In this document: positions 1,981 through 60,675 of the stretch, in pieces
Layout: each line of letters begins with the position of its first letter
Numbering within the stretch: the stretch's first letter is position 1
Assembly (NCBI GenBank): GCA_951804945.1
Contig: OX638162.1
Location: 35,340,001-35,404,000, forward strand
Length of the DNA stretch: 64,000 nt
Direction: 5' to 3'
From: Podarcis cretensis
Taxonomy: Eukaryota
The notes under the pieces: generated by a model
Databases searched by the model: none
The model's input: the letters and a program-made list of their open reading frames with translations, nothing else
Told to the model about the DNA's origin: nothing
Program-made: the position numbers and the translations under genes

Positions 1981-2801
1981 TTGCGTGGACAGGCAGAGTC
2001 CCCCCAACCCCAGGCAACCCCCGGGTGGAATAATGACTTAAGACACTATGTTATTGGATAAAAACTGGCCACAACTTTATTAAAACTTCAGATGTAGGCA
2101 TTGGGTGTTTATCCCTCCCAGTCCCCAGCCGGGGAGCTGGAGAACCTCAGGGTTATCCAGAATGAGTGGGGATTGGGCTGGCTCTGGAGAACATCTGTTC
2201 AAGCAGAGAGCCCGTCCCCCATTTCGCAGCTGTCGCAGGGGAGAGCAATGACAACAACCCCTTTAACGGGGAACCCTGGGATCGCCACCGCGGGGAAAGG
2301 GGGTGGGAGTCACCGCTTCAGCCCCCCCCCCATTTAGGGAAGATAGACCAAAGGATTCTTCCCAAGGCCTGAAACCACCAAAGTTGTGACGTTTTGCTAC
2401 AGGGAAGGCAAAACCTGCCAATGCAGGAAAATTACTTTCCGGACCTTCAGCAGTGACCGTGATGTAGCAGTATCCGTGTACCTGTGAAGAAGAGGTTAAC
2501 CTGCAAAAGAAAGCTGAACCAAGGGACGGCAGGGTGGGAGAAGCTCTGGAGCCGACTGAGGATTCCCAGGTAAGTTCCACCCTCTACTGTATGGGCAGGA
2601 CAGTCCCTCCCCTTACCTGGCCAAATCTCCTGGCAACCCCTCCCCAGCCAGGATAGGCTGGCAGAGGTAGGAGGCAACCTCCAGGTATCCAGCTTGGAGG
2701 GGGGTGAAGCCAGGCTGTACTGCCGGGAGCCGCATAGGTCCAGGGGGGCTGCGCAGGACCATGCAAAAGGCACCCCCCATTTGATGTGGGGAGCGGTCAT
2801 T
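1981..2801 (-). mobile_element. Non-coding element of the 'GTCACAACTT/AATAAAGTTGTGGC' family, copy A (DIRS/Ngaro-like terminal unit or Helitron2-like; class unresolved)
   Basis: Reverse-complement homolog of 55919-56785 over most of its length (ends ttgcgtggac...gagcggtcatt). No TSD; flanked by TT/AA. Confidence 0.8.
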
Positions 2802-15212: not shown

Positions 15213-15343
15213 CAGGCATATGCAAACTCGGCCCTCCAGATGTTTTGGGACTACAACTCCCATCATCCCTAGCTAACAGAACCAGTAGTCAGGGATGATG
15301 GGAGCTGTAGTCCCAAAACAGCTGGACAGTTTGCCTATGCCTG
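15213..15343. mobile_element. hAT MITE (palindromic 'ggactacaactccc' family)
   Basis: TIR caggcata.gcaaact/agtttgcctatgcctg; perfect 8-bp TSD ggttagac. Many degraded copies occur elsewhere (e.g. ~6590, 6900, 20450, 44993, 48536, 58843, 60503, 63382). Confidence 0.92.
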
Positions 15344-18929: not shown

Positions 18930-19097
18930 GAAGAAAATACCCTTATACTAAATAAGACCATTGGTCCATCTTGCTTACCATTGTCTACACTGATTTCATG
19001 CAGGAGTGCTTTTCTCAGCCTTATCTGGAGATGCCTGGTATTGAACCTACGACCTTCTGCATACAAAGCAGATGCTCTCACACTGAGCCATGGCCCA
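18930..19097 (-). mobile_element. tRNA-derived SINE (second family)
   Basis: Ends ...gatgctctcacactgagccatggccc (reverse tRNA head). Similar copies at ~30740-30900 and ~42748-42932. Confidence 0.75.
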
Positions 19098-26787: not shown

Positions 26788-27573
26788 AATGCCACTTCCG
26801 ACATCAGGAGGAGGGGGTTTTGCGGTTCTCACGACCCATTCACACTCTCGCGGGGCTGACTACAGCCCCGCGAGAACAGGGGAATCCCGGGATCATTAGT
26901 ATGCATTATTCATCGCGCCAGCCAATCGGCTGGCGGCGGGGGCGGGGCGAGTAAGGGGCATTTAAGGTCAGGATAGCCCATACTCGCCCCTTTCTTTCCT
27001 TCCAGCAGCTGCGCTTTCCCTCCCTCCCACCCTTTAGGTTCTAAGCTGGACTTTGCTATGGGCCTCGGCTGGTCGCCGCAAGGGGCCTGGTAGGAATTTT
27101 TCCATTTGGCTAATTGGCTATATTTTGGAAGCCACTTGGTTTTTTCGCCTACCTCGTAGCAAACGTCACAACTTCTTGGTTTTGGCGGTTAGGCATTGGC
27201 AGGGGTATTGTTATGCAAATGAGATGGGGGAGGAACGCCATCACCTCCCCCAAAATGCTGAAGGGTAGTTCGTTAAAGGACTCCGGGGGGCGTCGCCTCG
27301 TCCGAAACCTACGGAGGCTAGGGCCTAAAGCGCGCTCCCGAGCGGTAACCCCTCGGGGAGCGCCCAGGGATGTGCATCTCGGGGGCTCCCCCTGTTGGTG
27401 CTTAACCCTTCCCGGTTATACCGGTTAGTCTGATAGGGCCAATGCCTAAAGCCAATACCGCTCTTACCTGTAATCAATAAAGTTGTGGCCATTTTTCGCC
27501 CATTAATCTAAATTCTGTGTCCTGTGTCTTTATTTATTCCATTCAGTGGGAGGGGGCGGGAATAGACACGCAA
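26788..27573 (+). mobile_element. Non-coding element of the 'GTCACAACTT/AATAAAGTTGTGGC' family, copy B (divergent subfamily)
   Basis: Shares the motifs ttcgcct..cgtagcaaacgtcacaact, ccaatgcct, aataaagttgtggcc and terminal cacgcaa with copies A and C. CpG-rich, no TSD. Confidence 0.8.
26921..27002 (+). promoter_or_regulatory. Pol II promoter-like cassette within copy B
   Basis: CCAAT at 26922-26, tandem GC boxes at 26935-49, TATA-like catttaag at ~26959-66, pyrimidine-rich initiator-like tract ~30 bp downstream, AATAAA at 27476-81. Confidence 0.55.
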
Positions 27574-28851
27574 AATCCACTGGACCTCAGTAAACCGTAT
27601 ATGCAGTATGCTTCTGAATGCAAGTAGCTGAGAGTAGCAGGCAGGGAGAGCGCTCTTGTGCTTAGCTCCTGCTTGGGTGCTTCCCACAGGCATCTGATTG
27701 GCCACTGTGGTGACGGGATGCTGGACCAGATAGGCCACTGGGCTGGCTGCTTCAGCATGCTCTTCTTATGTTGGGCATGCTGGCTGGGCCTGATAGGAGT
27801 TGCACTCTAAAACACCTGGGGAGCTCCAGAAAGGGTAGATGATCCACTCAACAAAGATCCAGCAGAAGGGTTCCTCTTACATTCTTAACTGAATTTTCTT
27901 CTTATGAACCTCTGGGTGCTTCCTCACTTATTTTGTTTCTTTGATAAGTGCCTCTGGCCTTGAACAAGTGCCTCTAGTGGAGTCTGTGTGTGAATCTCTG
28001 TGTGTTGGTTCTTCTTGTTATGTTTCCCTGTTCCCCATGTTTATTCATAGCTCCCTACTATTTGTGCTTTTCAGAATGGCAGCTTAGATAAGAGAGAGTA
28101 GTGATTCAGTGTTTCACTCCTTGCTGATGACATTTATTGGAAACAATTTTCTGTTCCATTGCCACATCATGCTGAGACCCTTCTTCATCTTTATGAAGCT
28201 TCTATGTCACCCTTCTCTTCTTGGCACCACCAAGTTAAGGGAAATGCTGTAGACAACTTTTAAAGACTTGCCATGAAAATGAAACAACATAAATAAAGAC
28301 ACAGTGAGCAAGAGAAGCGCCATGGCTCATTGGTAGAGCACCTGATTTGTATGCAGAAGTTCCCAGGTTCAATTCCCAGCCTCTCAAAATAGAGTTTAGA
28401 AAGGTTCCCTGAGGCTGGAATCCTGGGGACTCTGAAAACTGTAACTCTCAACTCCCTTAATTCCCAGAATTCTTTGGCGGGTACCATGGCTGTTTGAAGT
28501 GACTACAGGTTCCAGAAACCCTCTTAACTGTGACTTTTTTTGCAGGGGGATGGGTGATCCATGAGTTTATCTGGGCCCTTTGAGACAGCCATGAGGCTGA
28601 GATGTGTTGAGCATGAAAGTTGTGTCAGAAGGAAAAGGAAATTCTAGCTGCATGTATTTGCTAGTAGTTTTTATTTTATTATGTATTTTTGTAATAGCTA
28701 TTGTTGTTTAGTTTTTAAAGATTGTTTAGAGTTTTAGTTGTTGTTCAGAGATATATTTATATATTTAGTGGTATAGAGGCAGTCAACAATTAACTAATTA
28801 ACTAATTAAAATGAAGCCCTCCAATAAACTCATAAGTAGTTTTGTAACATA

Positions 28852-29442: not shown

Positions 29443-29578
29443 CAGGCATAGGCAAACTCTGTCCTCCAGATGTTTTGGAACTACAACTCCCATCATCCCT
29501 GACCACTGGTTCTGTTAGCTAGGGATGATGGAAGTTGTAGTCCCAAAACATCTGGAGGACAGAGTTTGCCTATGCCTG
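29443..29578. mobile_element. hAT MITE
   Basis: Near-perfect palindrome caggcataggcaaactctgtcctccagatg...; perfect 8-bp TSD gtttacat. Confidence 0.93.
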
Positions 29579-29586
29579 GTTTACAT

Positions 29587-29724: not shown

Positions 29725-31126
29725 GTTTATACTGTATGTTAATAAAACCAGCAATTATCTTTTAAAATGTTTCTGCATTAATAATATATGTGGGCAATAA
29801 AAAGTATTGAAGGAATTATTGACTTAATGTTGAGTTGCTTTTCTGGTTTGTTGGGTTTGTTTTGCATTTGAACTGGAGAATATTAAAATAAGGTACGCTC
29901 AAGAGATGCATGTCATGAGTCTATGTCTTTGACTCTTTAGGGTAGGTCATCAATGGCTGAGGCAAGCTTAGTACCACTTCCTGCTGATTCAGATGGATAG
30001 ACGTTTCATTCCATGTTCCCCTAGTGGACCAGTGGTGTATAGACCAGAGGAGTCTATCACTAAGTCTTGTTTTCAGCAAAAATGAAGGACACACGTACAG
30101 AAAGTTCAACAACTCATCTGAGGGAATCAGATAATTGGTGAAGTCTGTTTTAATGTCTGGCCACCCAGCGATAGGCAATGACTTCTCGTCTTAATGGATT
30201 AGTCTAACAAAAATGTATTTTACTCAAGAGGTCTCCACTGCTCCAGAACTAATGAGAACAGGGAAATGCTCGTTTGGAACAATTTCCCTCATCTCCTCAG
30301 TGAGGCAACGGGGGGGGGGGGTGAGAAGAAGGAGGAGACAGCTTCTACCCCCTCCTTTTGCATACTTGATTAGAAAGAAAGTTGCTAATGGTAGCAGGAA
30401 ACCAAAGTATGTAATTCAAACACAAAATTGATTTAAAAAAAATCCAACTAAACCAAGTGGGTTGTTCATTTTGTTGTGCAAGTTTTGGAGAGATCACCCA
30501 CCAACCTTAAAGCATTAGATTATTTCAGGAGTTTAATGTAATATAGAATAGACAGGTTTTTTTCAAGACTCTGTCATTAAATAATATTTTAAGAAGATAT
30601 GGTTAAGTCCAGGAACCACGTGCACTGTAGCCCTATAAAACCTTCCACCTAGGACTTTTTCAACACAGTCACAATCAACACAGAAGAGCAGAAGTGACTC
30701 CTTATAATTTGAAGTGTCAACACACTTCAAATTCAAACCACTGGTCCTTCTAGCATGGTGTTTTCTACATAAACTGGCTGCAATTCTTCCAGATTTCAGA
30801 CAGAGGACATTCCCAGATTTCACTAGATCTGCCAGGGGATTGAACTTGGGATCTTCTGTTTTCAAAGCAGATGCTCTACCACTAAATTGCAGTCCTTCTC
30901 TCTGAATGCTCCATTGTCCCTTCTTGGAATTGCAAAGAGGAGCACATAGAACATATAAACCTGGAAATAGGCCAAGCCAGATACATGAAGGAGAACAGTA
31001 AGGTGTGAAAGCTGCCCATTCATACATACACTAATAATACATGGATGGGGGGGTGTTCATTGGCACACAGACTCATATGTGCTACATGCATAGGTCTGTC
31101 TGCCAACAAACCCCACTCACTATCCA

Positions 31127-46925: not shown

Positions 46926-48859
46926 TAAACATATAGTTTACAGACCAGGAAAAAATGATCTATAAGGGAATTAGGTTGCTGCTTCCTCGCATTGTCTTCT
47001 GGTCATCTTTATCCCCGTTGCCTCTTAATTAAAGCTCCAGACTCTGGAATATGCTCCAGCTACAATGTTTCCCATTTGCTGCAGTTGTGTGTCTACCCAA
47101 CTTCCTCACTCAACCTAGCATCCTGGTGCAGCCATTATTTGGGGTCTTCCACCAGTGTGGGGTTTGGGTGCAGCACCAACAAAGTGACTTCAAGTGTGGT
47201 GGAACTTGGGAGGCTCTTCACAGACAGGTGTTAAATATTCAGACATCTGGGAAGGGGTAGGGGAGGACCTGGAGACCTGGAGCATATCTGACACCAGTTT
47301 TTCCAAAGGACAATTTTTGTTGGCAAGTTTAGCTTTTGCCCTGTGTATGGTGAAAGAAAAATTGAATGTGATACAGGGCAAATGTAGAACATGCTGCACA
47401 GCCAAATGAAATGACAATGCAGCTTTTAGGCTATTGGTAGCTGCCTTTTGGCTTACTTGGCAGGGACAATTCTTTCACAGTTTTCAGCATCCACTGATTG
47501 CCAAAAGGTAGTAAATATGCACTTTTCAGCCACACACAATTTGTTAAAGGAAGACAAGAAATCACAAAGACAGTTTATTTTTCTCTCTTGTTATATAAAA
47601 CACACACACACACACACAAACAGCAAAGGTAAAGTTATCTGCAAGTAGAAATATCTGCCTAGAAAAACGTTTGAATCCAAGTTAACAGTATTTAAATGCA
47701 AGTGAAATCTCTATCCATCTTCAGTGGATATAAACTATGAGGGGCACATTTCCTCTTATGGAAATAATTTGTTTTCAAATAGTTACACAAATGTAGCTGT
47801 GACTGTCTTCTTTTCTTTTTTAAAAAAGACAGGCTGTTCTATCTTTTAAAAATATGTTATTTCACATAAAACTGCAAAATGTCAGCAGTTACAAACATAA
47901 TTATTTCAATTAGGAGCAACAGAGATCTTTAAAATAGTATTTCCAGACCTTGAGTGGCAAAAGGTGATGGGTGTCAGGTAAGAAAGAGACTTCCCCTACC
48001 CCAACTCACCCACTTTGAGGAATAAAGGCATTGACATTATGAGACATGCTTTTGTCACCACTTCAGTTTTAGACAAGAATGTCATGAAGTCTTTATATGT
48101 ACTTGAATGTTCAAACCCCATCAAAATAATTAAATGTGTCAACATTTCTAGTCACAACTAAAACTGTTATAATCTTATTCAACTTAAGCTGAAATAACTA
48201 CTGCCTCCTGAAGTAAAATGCTGTAGAACATATTACTGCAGTGGTAGCAGTAACATCAGTCAGTGCTGTGCTGAAACCTGTCCTCTGATATATTGAAAAA
48301 GAGTGTTCAGTTTTTCCCCTGCCTTATTTGCAGGGCACTTTAGAATTCAGCTTTCCATATTGTTGTGAAGTAACCATTTCATCCTTTCTTTATTTGTTGG
48401 AATTGTACCTTGCTTTGGTCTGGAGCCCCCAAAGCAAATAAGGTAAAAGAAACAGTAATAATAATAATTATTTATATGCCGCCCATCTGATTGGGTTACC
48501 CCAGCCCCTCTGGGTAGCTTCCAACAAATTAAAACAAGGGATGGAGAACCTGAGGCCCTTCAGATTTTTTTTGTAATACAACTCCCATCATGCCTGACCA
48601 ATGTCCATGTTGGCTGATGCTGATGGCAATTGGGGTCCAACAGTATATGGAGGGTCACCAGTGCACCAAACCAAATAGACAAAATATTCCAGTGAATGTG
48701 CAGATGAGTAGAAATTATGGGATTTTGCCTCCTTCCCTTTCTCCCCACTTCTCTCTCACAGGGCAGTTGATCTTATATGTGATGTCCCAGAATATGGTTG
48801 AGCAAAAGTGGAAGTGGGGGAGAAAGGGAGATTCAGAAAGCATAGGAAAAATACCTTCA

Positions 48860-55918: not shown

Positions 55919-56785
55919 AATGACCGCTCCCCGCATAAAACGGGGGGGGGGGACCTTTGCGTGGACGCGCGCAGCCCCTGGATCCGGAGCGGCTCCATTC
56001 AGCATAGGCTTGGCTTTGCCTTCCCTCAGGTGGGATACCTGGAGGTCTCCGCCTACCCCAGTCAGTTGTCCAATCCCACCTGGGGGAAGTGTTGCCAAGG
56101 AGATCAGGCCAGGTGGGGGAGGGATTACCTGCCCACACAATAGAGGGAGGATCTTACCTGGGAATCCTCACTTGGCTCCAGAGCTTCTCCCACCCTACCC
56201 ACCCACAGTTAATGCCTTGTTTTGCAGGTTAACTTTTCTTCACAGGTTTTGCAGGTTAACTTTTCTTACAGGTATGCAGGCGCTGCTACGTTAAGGTCGC
56301 TGTCAAAAGGCCGGAAAGGAATTTCCCTGCATTAGCAGGTTTCGCCTTTCCCGTAGCAAAACGTCACAACTTTGGCGGTATCAGGCCTTGGGCGGAATCC
56401 TTTAGTCCATCTTCCTCTTTGCAGCGGCGATACCAGGGTTCCCCATTAAAGGGGTTTCTGAAGGGAGGCTTTGACCGTACGCCGAAAGGTCGTCATTGCT
56501 CTCCCCTGCGGCAGCGGCGTAACAGGGGTGGCTATCTCTGCTTGAACATATGTTCTCCAGAGCCAGCCCATCCCACACACAAACATTGGATAACCCTGAT
56601 GCTCCCTAGGTCCCCGGCTGGGGACTGGGGAGGGAGAACGCCCAATGCCTGAGCCAAGGTCTACCCACATTTGAAATTTAATGAAGTTGTGGCCAATTTA
56701 ATCCCATAGCACGTTGTCTTGAGTCGTTATTCCACATGACGGGGGGGGGGCGCTCGGGACCTGGGGACTCTGCCTGTCCACGCAA
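55919..56785 (+). mobile_element. Non-coding element of the 'GTCACAACTT/AATAAAGTTGTGGC' family, copy C
   Basis: Subterminal ttgcgtggac (55957-66) is the perfect complement of terminal gtccacgcaa (56776-85). Homologous to copy A. Confidence 0.82.
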
Positions 56786-56886
56786 TGAAATCTCTCGCAT
56801 GATTATAGATGAACATCAACACAAGTTTAAGGAAATAAAAAAATTCCTTCCAGTAGCACCTTAAAGACCAACTAAGTTAGTTCTTG

Positions 56887-56924
56887 GTATGAGCTTTCGT
56901 GTGCATGCACACTTCTTCAGATAC
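56887..56924 (-). ncRNA. Mirror hammerhead ribozyme motif
   Basis: Exact reverse complement of 57015-57052. Confidence 0.8.
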
Positions 56925-57014
56925 ACTGAAACAGAAGTCACCAGACCCTTCTATATAGTGAGAAGGTCCCCACCTTCTCACTATATAGAAGGGTCTGGTG
57001 ACTTCTGTTTCAGT

Positions 57015-57052
57015 GTATCTGAAGAAGTGTGCATGCACACGAAAGCTCATAC
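57015..57052 (+). ncRNA. Minimal type I hammerhead ribozyme motif
   Basis: Stem I gtat/atac, core CTGAAGA (57019-25), palindromic stem II gtgtgcatgcacac, GAAA (57041-44), minimal palindromic stem III (AGCT), predicted cleavage after C57048. Confidence 0.8.
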
Positions 57053-58079
57053 CAAGAACTAACTTAGTTGGTCTTTAAGGTGCTACTGGAAGGAATTTTT
57101 TTATTTTGTTTTGACTATGGCAGACCAGCACGGCTACCTATCTGTAACAAGTTTAAGGGTTTAGTATTATATTATCCAGTCTTGATGGTTGTGGATGAAT
57201 ACACAAATGAAACTCAGTTGTAGGTCCCATGTTTGAACACTGGCATATCCAAGTTGGGCTGGAGAAACCTCCCCTACCTGAAACCATGAAGAGCGTTGTT
57301 CTTAGGAGGCTATTTGTGAGATCACAAAGAAGGCATGGTTGCTAGATAATATGACCCACCTCCTATTGGAGTGCTTGCCAGTGCCATGATAGATGGAATA
57401 ATGCAAATAGTTGTGAGAAGAAAGATGGGGATTGTGTGATGCCACAAGTGCACCAAAATAAATAAATAATTCTGCTCCCCCCCCCCCTTTCAGTTGCTCT
57501 TTGGAAGGTTCCCCCAAATGAATGGGCTATATCTGAGTTGATGTTCTAGTGAGATGTAGAGCAGATTAAGACAACACCTGTCTTAAGACATAGGCTAGAG
57601 TTGGGAACATTACTTTAAAAGTTGAGATAATTTCAATCTGTTTTAGTGTTTTAACCTTTGTATGGTTGTGATCTTTTTCTTGATTTTCCTGTTTTGAGGG
57701 GAACTGCTTTACAAAAAAAAAAACAAAAAAAACCCTGCTTTGCAAAACTGCTTACATACACATGAACAAAACTTTCAGAACACTCAGAAAGCTAAAACCA
57801 TTTACCAAGGCTGAACACTACAGGAAGTGCTCCAGGCAGGCAAACTATATCTGCCCAAATGGAACATGGCCAAGAGAGAAGCACTAATTATTTCTGTAAA
57901 ACTCGTACTCACACTGAAAAGAGAGAGAGAAACCTGTACCAGGTTGACAGCATCCATTTATCCATTTATGGAATCCATTTATTCTTTGCAAAGTCTGGTA
58001 TCACCAGTGGTATTTGCCAATATACCTATTTTCAGAAATATATGCTCTAAGTGGAAATGTGCAGCTTGATGCAGACACC

Positions 58080-58737: not shown

Positions 58738-59314
58738 TCACCCAACTTCACTGAACCATCAACCTTTTGGTTTGTGGCTCCACACAATGCAACTGTGGTA
58801 TGCCCAAGGGAACCTCAAGATGGCAACCACCCTGTAAATGAGGGCTAGGCAATATTGTGACCTCCAGGTATCACAGAACTACAACTCCCATCAGTCCCAG
58901 CCAGCATAGCCAATGACCAGGGATGATGGGAACTGTAGCCCAATAGCATCTGGAAGACATCCTGGTTACCCCTGCTTTAAATGCATACAACTATGTGCAA
59001 AGATGGCGAAAGAACAAGCATCTTTATAAATTAGATATAGATTTTATATAGGTTATACCAGTATGGGTGCTGAAGAGGACAAAGAAATCAGATGTGGAGT
59101 GCCCTAATAAGGTCTGCCCCTCACTGCTCCATTCCAACTGCATTGGAGTTAATTCTTAGAAAGGTGCAGTGGAATGTAGGAGGCACTCTAAGGACTTAAC
59201 CAGGTAAAAGCTGCAGAAGAGGGGCTTGACAGATAGAATGAGAGACCTCCAGTTTCCCTTTACCTTTAACCTATTGAGCTGACCTCTCTGTCTCTTTTCT
59301 GTTTAAACTGATAC

Positions 59315-60367: not shown

Positions 60368-60675
60368 AAGACCATAGCTCAGTTGTTAAGAGCATCTACT
60401 CGGCATGCAGAAGACCTCGTTTTTAACCCCCTGCATCTCCAAGTAGAGCTGGGAAAGCCCCCTGCCTGAAACCCTGTACAGACACTGCCAGTTAGTCTAT
60501 ACCAGATAGAGGAAACCTTTGGCCCTCCTGATGTTGATGAACCTCAAGTCCCATCAGCCCTAGTAAGCATAACCAATGGCCAGGAATGAAGAGAGCTGTA
60601 GTTCATCAAAATTAGGAGGATCAAAGGTGTTGATAACATTGAGACAGATGGACAAAGGGTCTGACTCAATGCAAT
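60368..60675 (+). mobile_element. tRNA-derived SINE split by a hAT MITE (~60503-60630)
   Basis: SINE head and body run to ~60502 and resume at ~60631 (..agatggacaaagggtctgactca). Confidence 0.75.

What the first reader, a model, noticed from the sequence alone, without database searches (positions are those of the whole stretch)
56363..56693. Conserved ~330-nt nested multi-stem fold shared by three divergent non-coding mobile elements (best candidate for an undescribed structured RNA/ssDNA module)
Seen: copies A (1981-2801, minus), B (26788-27573) and C (55919-56785) keep the same nested pairings although B differs strongly in primary sequence. P1 is GTCACAACTT/AAGTTGTGGC (C 56363-72/56684-93; B 27165-74/27480-89) and overlaps the end of the poly(A) signal. 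P2 is TCAGGCCTTGGGCG/CGCCCAATGCCTGA (C 56381-94/56639-52) versus TAGGCATTGGC/GCCAATGCCTA (B 27190-200/27438-48), with an outer TTGGC/GCCAA. P3 is CAGGGTT/AACCCTG (C 56434-40/56592-98) versus AAGGGT/ACCCTT (B 27261-66/27405-10). A hairpin with an RTTAAA loop has a co-varying stem (CCCC/GGGG in A and C; GTTC/GGAC in B, 27268-81). Whole arms are modular: A lacks the CCGAAAGG arm of C, and C lacks the G-rich/C-rich hairpin present in A and B. Inference: structure rather than sequence is under selection, suggesting a cis-acting element for priming, packaging, poly(A) control or self-processing. I cannot match it to a ribozyme class I know.
Basis: partly seen in the sequence, partly recalled or inferred. 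Interest (0 to 1): 0.8.

Follow-up and report, generated by a model that had tools for sequence, protein, structure and literature searches.

The report
Folded domain beside retroelement poly(A) signal
Three non-coding repeat units of a very abundant tyrosine-recombinase-type retroelement share a ~330-nt stretch whose best-conserved blocks pair with each other and enclose the region just upstream of the poly(A) signal; it is probably a cis-acting RNA (or cDNA) structure, but with three copies the covariation evidence is thin.

Summary
All the arms are at the stated coordinates. P1 (10 bp, invariant, overlapping the last two A's of AAUAAA), P1b (5 bp, absent in copy A), P2 (10-14 bp) and a small hairpin with an RTTAAA loop are shared by two families that otherwise align only in short blocks.

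Support:
- The consensus fold beats column-shuffled alignments (z -6.9; C versus B alone, -6.8).
- The region is not a decayed palindrome.
- In the A/C family the equal-length upstream control is unstructured.

Limits:
- "Structure rather than sequence is selected" is overstated. Of 25 core pairs, 19 never vary and only 3 show compensatory changes, two of them in the small hairpin.
- P3 is weak (pair probability at most 0.31).
- Copy A has a weaker P2.
- Both strands fold about equally well.
- No Rfam family or ribozyme matches.

The units look like solo A-B terminal-repeat units of a DIRS-order, Ngaro-like retroelement. They have no target duplication, a GCAATGA junction, and a head-to-tail joint in public contigs. 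About 8,500 contig pieces of one run match copy C.

Best reading: a cis-acting domain at the 3' end of the element's transcript, serving 3'-end formation and/or reverse-transcriptase recognition.

The scan's first readers flagged similar long-range stems in Ngaro repeats elsewhere in this genome (s1-838211, s1-835588). These notes are unchecked.

The parts
55919..56785 (+). Copy C: whole repeat unit (putative solo A-B unit of a DIRS-order/Ngaro-like retroelement)
   Evidence: Alignment with copy A (blastn 72% over the full length). No target-site duplication. The right junction reads GCAATGA. Head-to-tail joint 56788->55954 in run X1 contigs.
56363..56693 (+). Copy C: the ~330-nt closed multi-branch domain (the finding)
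   Evidence: MFE -137.1 kcal/mol, z -4.3. P1, P1b, P2 and the hairpin are in the MFE and the centroid.
56340..56372 (+). 33-nt block conserved between families, ending in the P1 5' arm (GTCACAACTT, 56363-56372)
   Evidence: One of two blastn hits between B and the A/C copies. The 19-20-mer is exact in all three copies.
56684..56693 (+). P1 3' arm AAGTTGTGGC; overlaps the last two A's of the poly(A) hexamer (56680-56685, AATGAA in this copy)
   Evidence: 10 pairs identical in all three copies; the family majority has A at 56683 (AATAAA).
56372..56376 (+). P1b 5' arm TTGGC (pairs with GCCAA at 56653-56657)
   Evidence: Pair probability 0.98 in the whole-unit fold. Also present in B, absent in A.
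56381..56394 (+). P2 5' arm TCAGGCCTTGGGCG
   Evidence: (I3). Pair probability 0.92 in the whole-unit fold.
56639..56652 (+). P2 3' arm CGCCCAATGCCTGA (contains a CCAAT motif)
   Evidence: The core CCAATGCCT is identical in all three copies.
56441..56454 (+). Hairpin CCCC-ATTAAA-GGGG: conserved RTTAAA loop, covarying stem
   Evidence: two compensatory pairs and one one-sided change against copy B. Pair probability 0.95.
56434..56440 (+). P3 5' arm CAGGGTT (partner AACCCTG at 56592-56598); weak
   Evidence: 7 bp with one compensatory pair against B. Probability is only 0.15. It forms in the minus-strand MFE folds of copies C and B.
56714..56735 (+). GU/U-rich block (GTTGTCTTGAGTCGTTATTCC) conserved in all copies; a likely downstream element of the poly(A) site
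   Evidence: Conserved columns. The function is inferred from general knowledge of poly(A) sites.
27165..27489 (+). Copy B (divergent family): homologous domain. P1 27165-74/27480-89; P1b 27182-86/27451-55; P2 27189-27200/27438-49; hairpin 27268-81; AATAAA 27476-81
   Evidence: MFE -145.6 kcal/mol, z -4.5. In the whole-unit fold, P1 is 0.79, P2 0.98 and the hairpin 0.99.
26788..27573 (+). Copy B: whole unit
   Evidence: It shares only short blocks with A and C.
2068..2390 (-). Copy A: homologous domain. P1 2390-2381/2077-2068; P2 core 2370-2361/2105-2096; hairpin 2271-2258; P1b 3' arm deleted
   Evidence: MFE -134.4 kcal/mol, z -2.5. P1 is 0.76-1.0 and the P2 core 0.53-0.69 when the RNA is cut at the putative poly(A) site.
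1981..2801 (-). Copy A: whole unit

Best explanation
The three copies are solo terminal-repeat units (repeat A plus repeat B) of two families of a DIRS-order, Ngaro-like tyrosine-recombinase retroelement that is very abundant in this genome.

In each unit the ~325-331 nt ending at the poly(A) signal can close into a multi-branch domain of the sense transcript. Its parts are:
- an invariant 10-bp helix P1, whose 3' arm begins inside AAUAAA;
- a 5-bp P1b;
- a 10-14-bp P2;
- a small hairpin with a conserved RUUAAA loop (central UUAA is self-complementary) and a covarying stem;
- family-specific GC-rich hairpins inside.

I think this is a cis-acting 3'-terminal domain of the element's RNA. It holds the poly(A) signal at its base, so it can tune cleavage or read-through. 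The B repeat occurs twice in a full element, and the upstream copy has to be read through. The domain also offers a compact platform for the element's reverse transcriptase or Gag, for template recognition, dimerisation or packaging.

Shown here: the complementarity, its conservation across families, excess folding energy, and limited covariation. Inferred: that the folding molecule is the sense RNA, that the AATAAA is used as a poly(A) signal, and every functional step.
For: - Arms are exact at the stated coordinates, and P1 and the P2 core are identical in all three copies.
- B shares only two blastn-detectable blocks with A and C, and each contains one arm of P1.
- The consensus fold beats column shuffles: z -6.9, and -6.8 for C versus B alone.
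- MFE z is -4.3, -4.5 and -2.5, against -0.5 and +0.6 for upstream controls in the A/C family.
- The region is not a decayed palindrome: half against the reverse complement of the other half gives z 0.4-1.4.
- The hairpin stem has two compensatory pairs around an invariant loop.
- Cutting the RNA at the putative poly(A) site raises P1 and P2 probabilities in A and C, and in B when the RNA starts at unit position 201 or later.
- Sense RNA is 9-14 kcal/mol more stable than antisense in C and B, and P1 carries an invariant U.G that becomes A.C on the other strand.
- None of the 17 listed variable positions inside the domain falls in the ~80 stem nucleotides (only the 40 best-supported of 81 are listed).
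- AATAAA is followed by conserved GGCCA and a GU-rich block.
- Element identity: no target duplication, a GCAATGA junction, a head-to-tail joint, and 8,558 contig pieces laid in one DNA run.
- Principle: a hairpin over AAUAAA regulates HIV-1 polyadenylation (PMC2645353). RT recognition of 3' stem-loops is known for stringent LINEs (PMC5135761).
Against: - There are only three copies, in effect two lineages. Nineteen of 25 core pairs never vary, and 22 of 500 shuffles match the covariation score.
- The RNAalifold covariation term is only -0.98 kcal/mol.
- P3 is weak.
- In whole-unit folds P1 is 0.02 in C and 0.11 in A, and P2 is 0.08 in A.
- Copy A lacks P1b.
- The antisense strand, as RNA or DNA, folds with similar z.
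- RNA reads from one species are few, come from both orientations, show no sharp starts or ends, and mostly run on into unlike sequence. No dedicated transcript or poly(A) site was seen.
- No full-length element could be fetched, so the position of the module within repeats A and B is not established.
- The P2 3' arm is a CCAAT motif and the P1 5' block holds an ACGTCA motif. These could be conserved as DNA sites.
Confidence: 0.45

Rival explanations
1. The fold acts in single-stranded minus-strand cDNA, not in RNA. It would compact the B-repeat end of the linear ss cDNA. It would also hold the cDNA 5' end (the complement of the P1 3' arm) against the complement of the P1 5' arm, helping end restoration, circle formation or second-strand synthesis before the tyrosine recombinase acts.
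For: - The minus strand folded with DNA parameters keeps P1, P1b and P2, and forms P3, which the sense MFE of copy C does not (z -4.7 for B, -3.8 for C).
- DIRS-1 replicates through mostly linear single-stranded cDNA and needs internal complementary sequences after first-strand synthesis (PMC7192593).
- The units also carry 40-nt imperfect inverted termini (I1).
Against: - The invariant U.G in P1 and the U.G in B's hairpin become A.C mismatches on the minus strand.
- The sense strand is more stable in C and B (versus 42-43).
- There is no direct evidence for any cDNA intermediate here.
Confidence: 0.2
2. There is no selected fold. The conserved blocks are double-stranded DNA signals: CCAAT boxes in both orientations, an ACGTCA (CRE-like) site, and a TATA-like or poly(A) AATAAA with its downstream element. 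Their complementarity would be a by-product of inverted binding sites or chance.
For: - The P2 3' arm is CCAATGCC in all copies, and in B the 5' arm is its inverse, ATTGG.
- B has a second GCCAAT 12 nt downstream.
- P1 and the P2 core are invariant rather than covarying.
- Both strands fold equally well.
Against: - In A and C the P2 5' arm is CCTTGG, not a CCAAT box, yet it still pairs.
- The helix ends and the hairpin show compensatory changes.
- Consensus folding energy is far beyond column shuffles.
- I know of no factor that would need GTCACAACTT and its near-complement 310 nt apart.
Confidence: 0.2
3. Fold-back or cyclisation priming. The 10 nt after AAUAAA, near the RNA 3' end, anneal to the last 10 nt of repeat A (the P1 5' arm). 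That site sits where a primer-binding site lies in LTR elements. This would start or guide minus-strand synthesis, as a Tf1-like self-primer or a Ty1-like 5'-3' cyclisation.
For: - P1 is the one helix that is invariant across families.
- Polarity is right: extension from the 3' arm would copy repeat A towards the RNA 5' end (sequence).
- Conserved block (i) ends exactly at CACAACTT, B has an 8-nt insert there, and 7 RNA reads begin matching at 56373 after unlike sequence. This hints at an A|B boundary at 56372/56373.
- The primer of DIRS-order elements is unknown, and a 3' hairpin has been proposed (PMC7192593).
Against: - A poly(A) tail, or the GGCCA tail, would leave an unpaired 3' flap. The bases upstream of the 5' arm are A-rich, so they cannot pair with the tail.
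- The A|B boundary rests on 7 reads with 73% agreement.
- No full-length element was examined.
Confidence: 0.08
4. A self-cleaving ribozyme or other self-processing RNA.
For: The only support is the multi-stem architecture and the fact that a neighbouring palindrome was flagged by another reader as hammerhead-bearing.
Against: - No ribozyme or any other Rfam family matches in any copy at E<=10.
- The conserved positions are the helices, not an unpaired catalytic core.
- Interior arms are freely gained and lost.
Confidence: 0.02

Closest known systems
Terminal repeats of DIRS-order retrotransposons (Ngaro split direct repeats A1...B1-A2-B2; DIRS-1 inverted repeats plus internal complementary region)
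   Same: No target-site duplication, a shared junction core, head-to-tail B|A junctions, imperfect inverted termini and a poly(A) signal near the 3' end. In these elements, internal complementarity is essential for replication (PMC9210276, PMC7192593).
   Different: The papers I could search describe no ~330-nt closed domain next to the poly(A) signal for Ngaro or DIRS elements. Here the complementary blocks lie inside one unit and not at the element ends.
HIV-1 poly(A) hairpin and HTLV-1 Rex-responsive element (structures in the retroviral R region that govern poly(A) site use)
   Same: A helix in a terminal repeat overlaps or presents the AAUAAA, and the repeat occurs twice in the RNA, so use of the signal must depend on context (PMC2645353).
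   Different: Here only the last two nucleotides of the hexamer and the next eight are paired, by a long-range helix that closes a 310-nt domain upstream of the signal. No regulatory protein is known. There is no sequence or Rfam similarity.
3'-UTR folds recognised by reverse transcriptase in non-LTR elements (R2, stringent LINE/SINE pairs)
   Same: A structured domain at the 3' end of the template RNA, conserved more in shape than in the sequence of its interior.
   Different: Those elements use target-primed reverse transcription. DIRS-order reverse transcriptases are related to those of LTR elements (my own knowledge), and their primer is unknown (PMC7192593). Recognition was not tested here.
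Tf1 self-priming and Ty1 CYC5/CYC3 cyclisation (from my own knowledge, not checked in a paper here)
   Same: Short (about 7-14 nt) intramolecular RNA duplexes between the region after the 5' repeat and another part of the same RNA. They are required for initiation or strand transfer.
   Different: The location of the P1 5' arm at the end of repeat A is only a hypothesis, and the 3' arm is not at a free 3'-OH.

Membership tests
DIRS-order / Ngaro-like tyrosine-recombinase retroelement (terminal-repeat unit) | Insertion without target-site duplication | tested here: met
   The flanks of A, B and C share no 4-6-bp duplication, only A/AA next to the ends.
DIRS-order / Ngaro-like tyrosine-recombinase retroelement (terminal-repeat unit) | End-to-start (B|A) junction with a short shared core, as in B1-A2 | tested here: met
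   A run X1 contig joins 56788 to 55954 through the unit start (tables 5 and 5c). The right junction of copy C reads GCAATGA. The scan note s1-835096 reports the same core in a full element (unchecked).
DIRS-order / Ngaro-like tyrosine-recombinase retroelement (terminal-repeat unit) | Split direct repeats around ORFs for RT/RNase H and a tyrosine recombinase | not testable with these tools
   No such ORF lies in the window. No collection holding this genome could be searched by DNA. This rests only on the scan notes s1-839427 and s1-835096.
Solo LTR of an integrase-type LTR retrotransposon or endogenous retrovirus | TG...CA termini | tested here: met
   All three units can be read as TG...CA.
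Solo LTR of an integrase-type LTR retrotransposon or endogenous retrovirus | 4-6-bp target-site duplication | tested here: not met
   None is present in any of the three copies.
Any described structured RNA or ribozyme (Rfam 15) | Covariance-model match at the gathering score, or at least E<=10 | tested here: not met
   At the gathering threshold there are only two tRNA-like hits elsewhere in the window. The E<=10 scans of all three units show one chance-level lncRNA-fragment hit inside the C domain (12 bits, E=8) and nothing else relevant.
Decayed DNA palindrome / foldback repeat | Residual similarity between one half and the reverse complement of the other, outside the helices | tested here: not met
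   Global alignment score z is 0.4, 1.4 and 1.2 against dinucleotide shuffles.
Conserved RNA structure in the strict sense (covariation-supported) | Statistically significant compensatory changes across independent lineages | tested here: inconclusive
   Three of 25 core pairs are compensatory and 19 never vary, with 22 of 500 shuffles as high. Three sequences are too few.
Poly(A)-signal-occluding helix (HIV-1 type) | Base pairing that includes the hexamer or its immediate 3' flank | tested here: met
   The P1 3' arm covers the last two A's of AATAAA plus 8 nt. No effect on polyadenylation was tested.

The most novel reading that the evidence does not exclude
P1 is the missing primer or cyclisation signal of DIRS-order retroelements. 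The 10 nt after AAUAAA in repeat B would anneal to the last 10 nt of repeat A, at the position of a primer-binding site. The P1b-P2 domain would act as the clamp that brings them together. The extra A2-B2 of the split direct repeats would then exist to start, or guide, minus-strand synthesis without a tRNA.
Probability: 0.08. Interest if true: 0.8.

Novelty: new variant of a known kind. Interest (0 to 1): 0.45.

Why it matters
Tyrosine-recombinase retroelements are the least understood retrotransposon order. How reverse transcription is primed is unknown, as stated in PMC7192593. How the upstream copy of a repeated poly(A) signal is bypassed has also not been explained, to my knowledge.

A conserved, closed domain whose base helix touches the poly(A) signal gives a concrete, mutable cis element for testing both questions. 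It is shared by families that otherwise no longer align.

The family is also very abundant here, with thousands of contig pieces in a single run. A genome-wide covariation test is therefore feasible and would settle whether the fold is real.

Tried and rejected
- **More copies through spurious ORFs.** I searched an alignment of the antisense 74- and 78-aa ORFs of C and A against the protein collection, hoping to fetch their contigs. Nothing scored.
- **More copies by DNA pattern.** The conserved 19-20-mer gave 0 matches in viral contigs, 0 in prokaryotic genomes and one chance hit in a metagenome (a coding-looking contig with no partner arm).
- **Other copies or fragments in the window.** There are none beyond A, B and C.
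- **Autonomous partner in the window.** No ORF of 120 aa or more has a transposon domain.
- **Decayed-palindrome origin.** Rejected.
- **Ribozyme or any other Rfam family.** Rejected.
- **Solo LTR of an integrase-type element.** Rejected for lack of target duplications.
- **A tRNA primer-binding site at TGGCGGT after P1, or a tRNA-Gly-like A box in copy A.** I only recalled resemblances of 6-12 nt, no tRNA model hits the units, and I dropped the idea.
- **Expression.** RNA reads are sparse, come from both orientations, and show no defined ends, so they decide nothing.
- **Covariance model of the whole domain.** Not built. It would have about 330 positions, above the practical calibration limit, and there was no further sequence to search.

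The alignment tool prints an automatic majority line.

Full report
**What is there**

The window holds three units of a non-coding repeat: C at 55919-56785 (+), A at 1981-2801 (-) and B at 26788-27573 (+).

- A and C align over their whole length at 72% identity with indels.
- B is another family. blastn links it to A and C only through a 33-nt block ending in GTCACAACTT and a 21-nt block, AATAAAGTTGTGGCCA plus a few T's.
- MAFFT adds three short shared blocks: TTTGGCGGT, AGGCMTTGG and CCAATGCCT.
- There are no further copies or fragments in the 64 kb.

**Check of the observation**

- **P1** is ten pairs (G-C, U.G, C-G, A-U, C-G, A-U, A-U, C-G, U-A, U-A), identical in all three copies. Its 3' arm begins with the last two A's of the AATAAA hexamer. 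Copy C reads AATGAA, but relatives in public runs carry A at 56683.
- **P1b** (TTGGC/GCCAA) exists in C and B. A has lost the 3' arm in a 15-nt deletion.
- **P2** has a 9-bp core, AGGCnTTGG/CCAATGCCT. It is perfect in B and has one C.U mismatch in A and C. It extends to 14 bp in C and 12 bp in B but only 10 bp in A. One outer pair is C-G in C, U-A in B and broken in A. One inner pair is G-C in A and C and C-G in B.
- **P3** is 7 bp in each copy, with one C-G to A-U exchange.
- **The hairpin** has CCCC/GGGG in A and C and GUUC/GGAC in B, around an invariant RUUAAA loop. That is two compensatory pairs and one wobble change.
- **Arms are modular.** C has a 32-nt arm that A lacks. A and B have a G-run/C-run hairpin that C lacks. 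Reads and contigs that diverge from copy C at 56415 carry that arm, so C is the deleted form (tables 5c and 7).

**Is it more than chance?**

- *Single-sequence folding.* The ~330-nt stretches give z -4.3 (C), -4.5 (B) and -2.5 (A) against dinucleotide shuffles. Equal-length stretches just upstream in the same units give -0.5 (C), +0.6 (A) and -3.6 (B). In the A/C family the excess structure is therefore specific to this part.
- *Consensus folding.* The RNAalifold energy of the three-way alignment is -66.6 kcal/mol, against -35.3 +/- 4.5 for column-shuffled alignments (z -6.9, 0 of 200). For C versus B alone, at 37% identity, z is -6.8.
- *Not a decayed palindrome.* One half against the reverse complement of the other half is no more similar than shuffles (z 0.4-1.4). 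The complementarity is confined to discrete helices.
- *Core pairs.* On 25 core pairs (P1, P2, hairpin), 97% of cells pair, against 29-53% when partners are slid by 1-3 columns.

The limits are as follows.

- Nineteen of those 25 pairs never vary and only three are compensatory. Twenty-two of 500 shuffles reach the same covariation score.
- The covariation term of RNAalifold is only -0.98 kcal/mol.
- In whole-unit folds, P2 and P1b are near-certain in C and B (0.92-0.98) but 0.08 in A. P1 is 0.79 in B, 0.02 in C and 0.11 in A. P3 is 0.31 or less everywhere.
- When the RNA is cut where a poly(A) site would lie, after GGCCA or the next CCA, P1 rises to 0.76-1.0 in A. It reaches 0.97-0.98 in B when the RNA starts at unit position 201, the point I take for its start site, but stays at 0.06-0.13 when it starts at the unit's first base. 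The P2 core is 0.53-1.0 in all three copies.

So P1, P1b, P2 and the small hairpin are real, shared and beyond chance. P3 is doubtful. The claim that structure rather than sequence is selected holds only for the small hairpin and a few helix-end pairs.

**Which strand, and which molecule?**

- The antisense strand folds with similar z: -2.7, -4.4 and -3.3 as RNA, and -3.8 and -4.7 as DNA. It also forms P3.
- The sense RNA is 9-14 kcal/mol more stable in C and B.
- The invariant U.G in P1 and a U.G in B's hairpin would be A.C mismatches on the other strand.
- I lean to the sense strand, but this is not decided.

**What the units are**

- They begin (A)ATGMC and end CACGCAA, and have no target-site duplication. 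That excludes an integrase-type solo LTR, although the ends can be read as TG...CA.
- The right junction of C reads GCAATGA. One contig of run X1 joins the unit end directly to the unit start.
- The ends are imperfect 40-nt inverted repeats (I1), with a short hairpin in the extra 5' segment.
- One DNA run laid 8,558 contig pieces on copy C, so the family is very abundant. Runs from ten coded organisms hold half or more of its 31-mers.
- First-reader notes of this scan, which I could not check, report full Ngaro-like elements (gag, RT/RNase H, tyrosine recombinase, SGNH hydrolase) in the same genome with the same GCAATGA core at all junctions. They also report a "covarying long-range stem in the Ngaro B repeat" elsewhere.
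- Ngaro elements carry split direct repeats, A1-internal-B1-A2-B2 (PMC9210276). A unit that starts like A and ends like B is what recombination between A1 and A2 would leave.
- I therefore read the three copies as solo A-B units. No full-length element could be examined here.

**Anatomy around the domain**

- AATAAA is followed by conserved GGCCA, a T-run, a CCA and a GU-rich block, TGTCYT..GTC.TTATT. This is what a working poly(A) site looks like (general knowledge).
- B has CCAAT, a GC box and a TATA-like CATTTAAGG at 26918-26968, about 500 nt upstream. A transcript from there to the poly(A) site would contain the whole domain.
- Conserved block (i) ends exactly at CACAACTT, and B has an 8-nt insert there. 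Seven RNA reads of one run start matching copy C at 56373 after unlike sequence (table 7). This hints that 56372|56373 is the A|B boundary.
- If so, P1 pairs the last 10 nt of A with the 10 nt after AAUAAA in B, while P1b, P2 and the hairpin lie in B. This is a hypothesis with weak support.

**How it most likely works**

A full element has B twice. The RNA must read through the first poly(A) signal to carry the B1|A2 junction. This is an inference from the repeat architecture, by analogy with the DIRS-1 internal complementary region, which is essential after first-strand synthesis (PMC7192593).

A helix that sequesters the 3' flank of the hexamer is the kind of device HIV-1 uses to tune its repeated poly(A) signal (PMC2645353). 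A compact 3'-terminal domain is also what reverse transcriptases of other retroelements recognise (PMC5135761).

I therefore commit to a cis-acting 3'-terminal RNA domain that serves 3'-end formation and/or recognition by the element's proteins (confidence 0.45). The conserved RUUAAA loop on a covarying stem is the best candidate for a protein contact or a loop-loop contact.

The rivals are:
- the same fold in minus-strand cDNA (0.2);
- conserved DNA motifs with no fold (0.2);
- fold-back or cyclisation priming through P1 (0.08);
- a ribozyme (0.02).

**Expression**

Two bulk RNA runs and one single-cell run of one species gave 93, 60 and 13 reads at 90-99% likeness. They came from both orientations with no sharp starts or ends, and more than half ran on into unlike sequence. 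This shows low, probably passive, transcription of relatives. It shows nothing about a dedicated transcript.

**Known families**

No Rfam family matches at the gathering score or at E<=10 in any copy. Full-text searches found no description of a structured domain in Ngaro or DIRS repeats.

**Limits**

- There are three copies, and no access to the rest of the genome or to a full-length element.
- The read tables are truncated to the best-supported rows.

Noticed in passing
window 56833-57106: A perfect 135-bp-arm palindrome lies 48 nt downstream of copy C (I2). An Rfam scan at E<=10 gives only generic long-hairpin hits (miRNA precursors below their gathering scores) and no hammerhead family.
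   Followed up: partly
window 55957-55996 and 56746-56785; 26812-26829 and 27564-27581: The unit ends are imperfect inverted repeats (40 nt at 73% in C, about 18 nt in B). The left one is offset inward by a ~38-nt extra segment.
   Followed up: partly
window 55924-55950; 2795-2770 (-); 26792-26817: The extra 5' segment folds into a short hairpin in all three copies. The loop-closing pair is G-C in C and A-T in A. Energies are not beyond shuffles (z -1.5, -1.8, 0.0).
   Followed up: partly
window 56373 (reads of run X24): Seven RNA reads start matching copy C exactly after the P1 5' arm and carry unlike sequence before it (73% agreement). This may be a junction of internal sequence with repeat B in full-length relatives (table 7). 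That sequence is not in the window.
   Followed up: partly
window 56415: Many reads and contigs of relatives carry a ~38-40-nt G-run/C-run hairpin arm here that copy C lacks (tables 5c and 7). Copies A and B have it.
   Followed up: partly
window 56219-56270: Copy C has a ~25-nt tandem duplication (TTTTGCAGGTTAACTTTTCTT.ACAGG) that copy A lacks.
   Followed up: no
window 26846-26875 and 26918-26968: Copy B has a perfect 13-bp-arm hairpin. Downstream it has CCAAT, GGGGCGGGGC and CATTTAAGG in promoter-like spacing.
   Followed up: no
window 55929-56294 (+) and 2447-2800 (-): The ATG of the conserved ATGACC start opens an ORF of 117 aa or more in both A and C. The frames diverge after an indel, and the 134-aa ORF of copy C has no Pfam match. 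It is probably not coding.
   Followed up: partly
window 19026-19095 (-) and 30824-30896 (-): Two tRNA-model hits just above the gathering score. They look like tRNA-derived SINE heads (D8, I7, I12, I13).
   Followed up: no
window 15233-15328, 29463-29583, 48568-48653, 58861-58956, 60524-60619: A family of ~90-120-nt palindromic MITE-like repeats with the motif ACTACAACTCCCATCATCCC (D1, D2, I5, I14).
   Followed up: no
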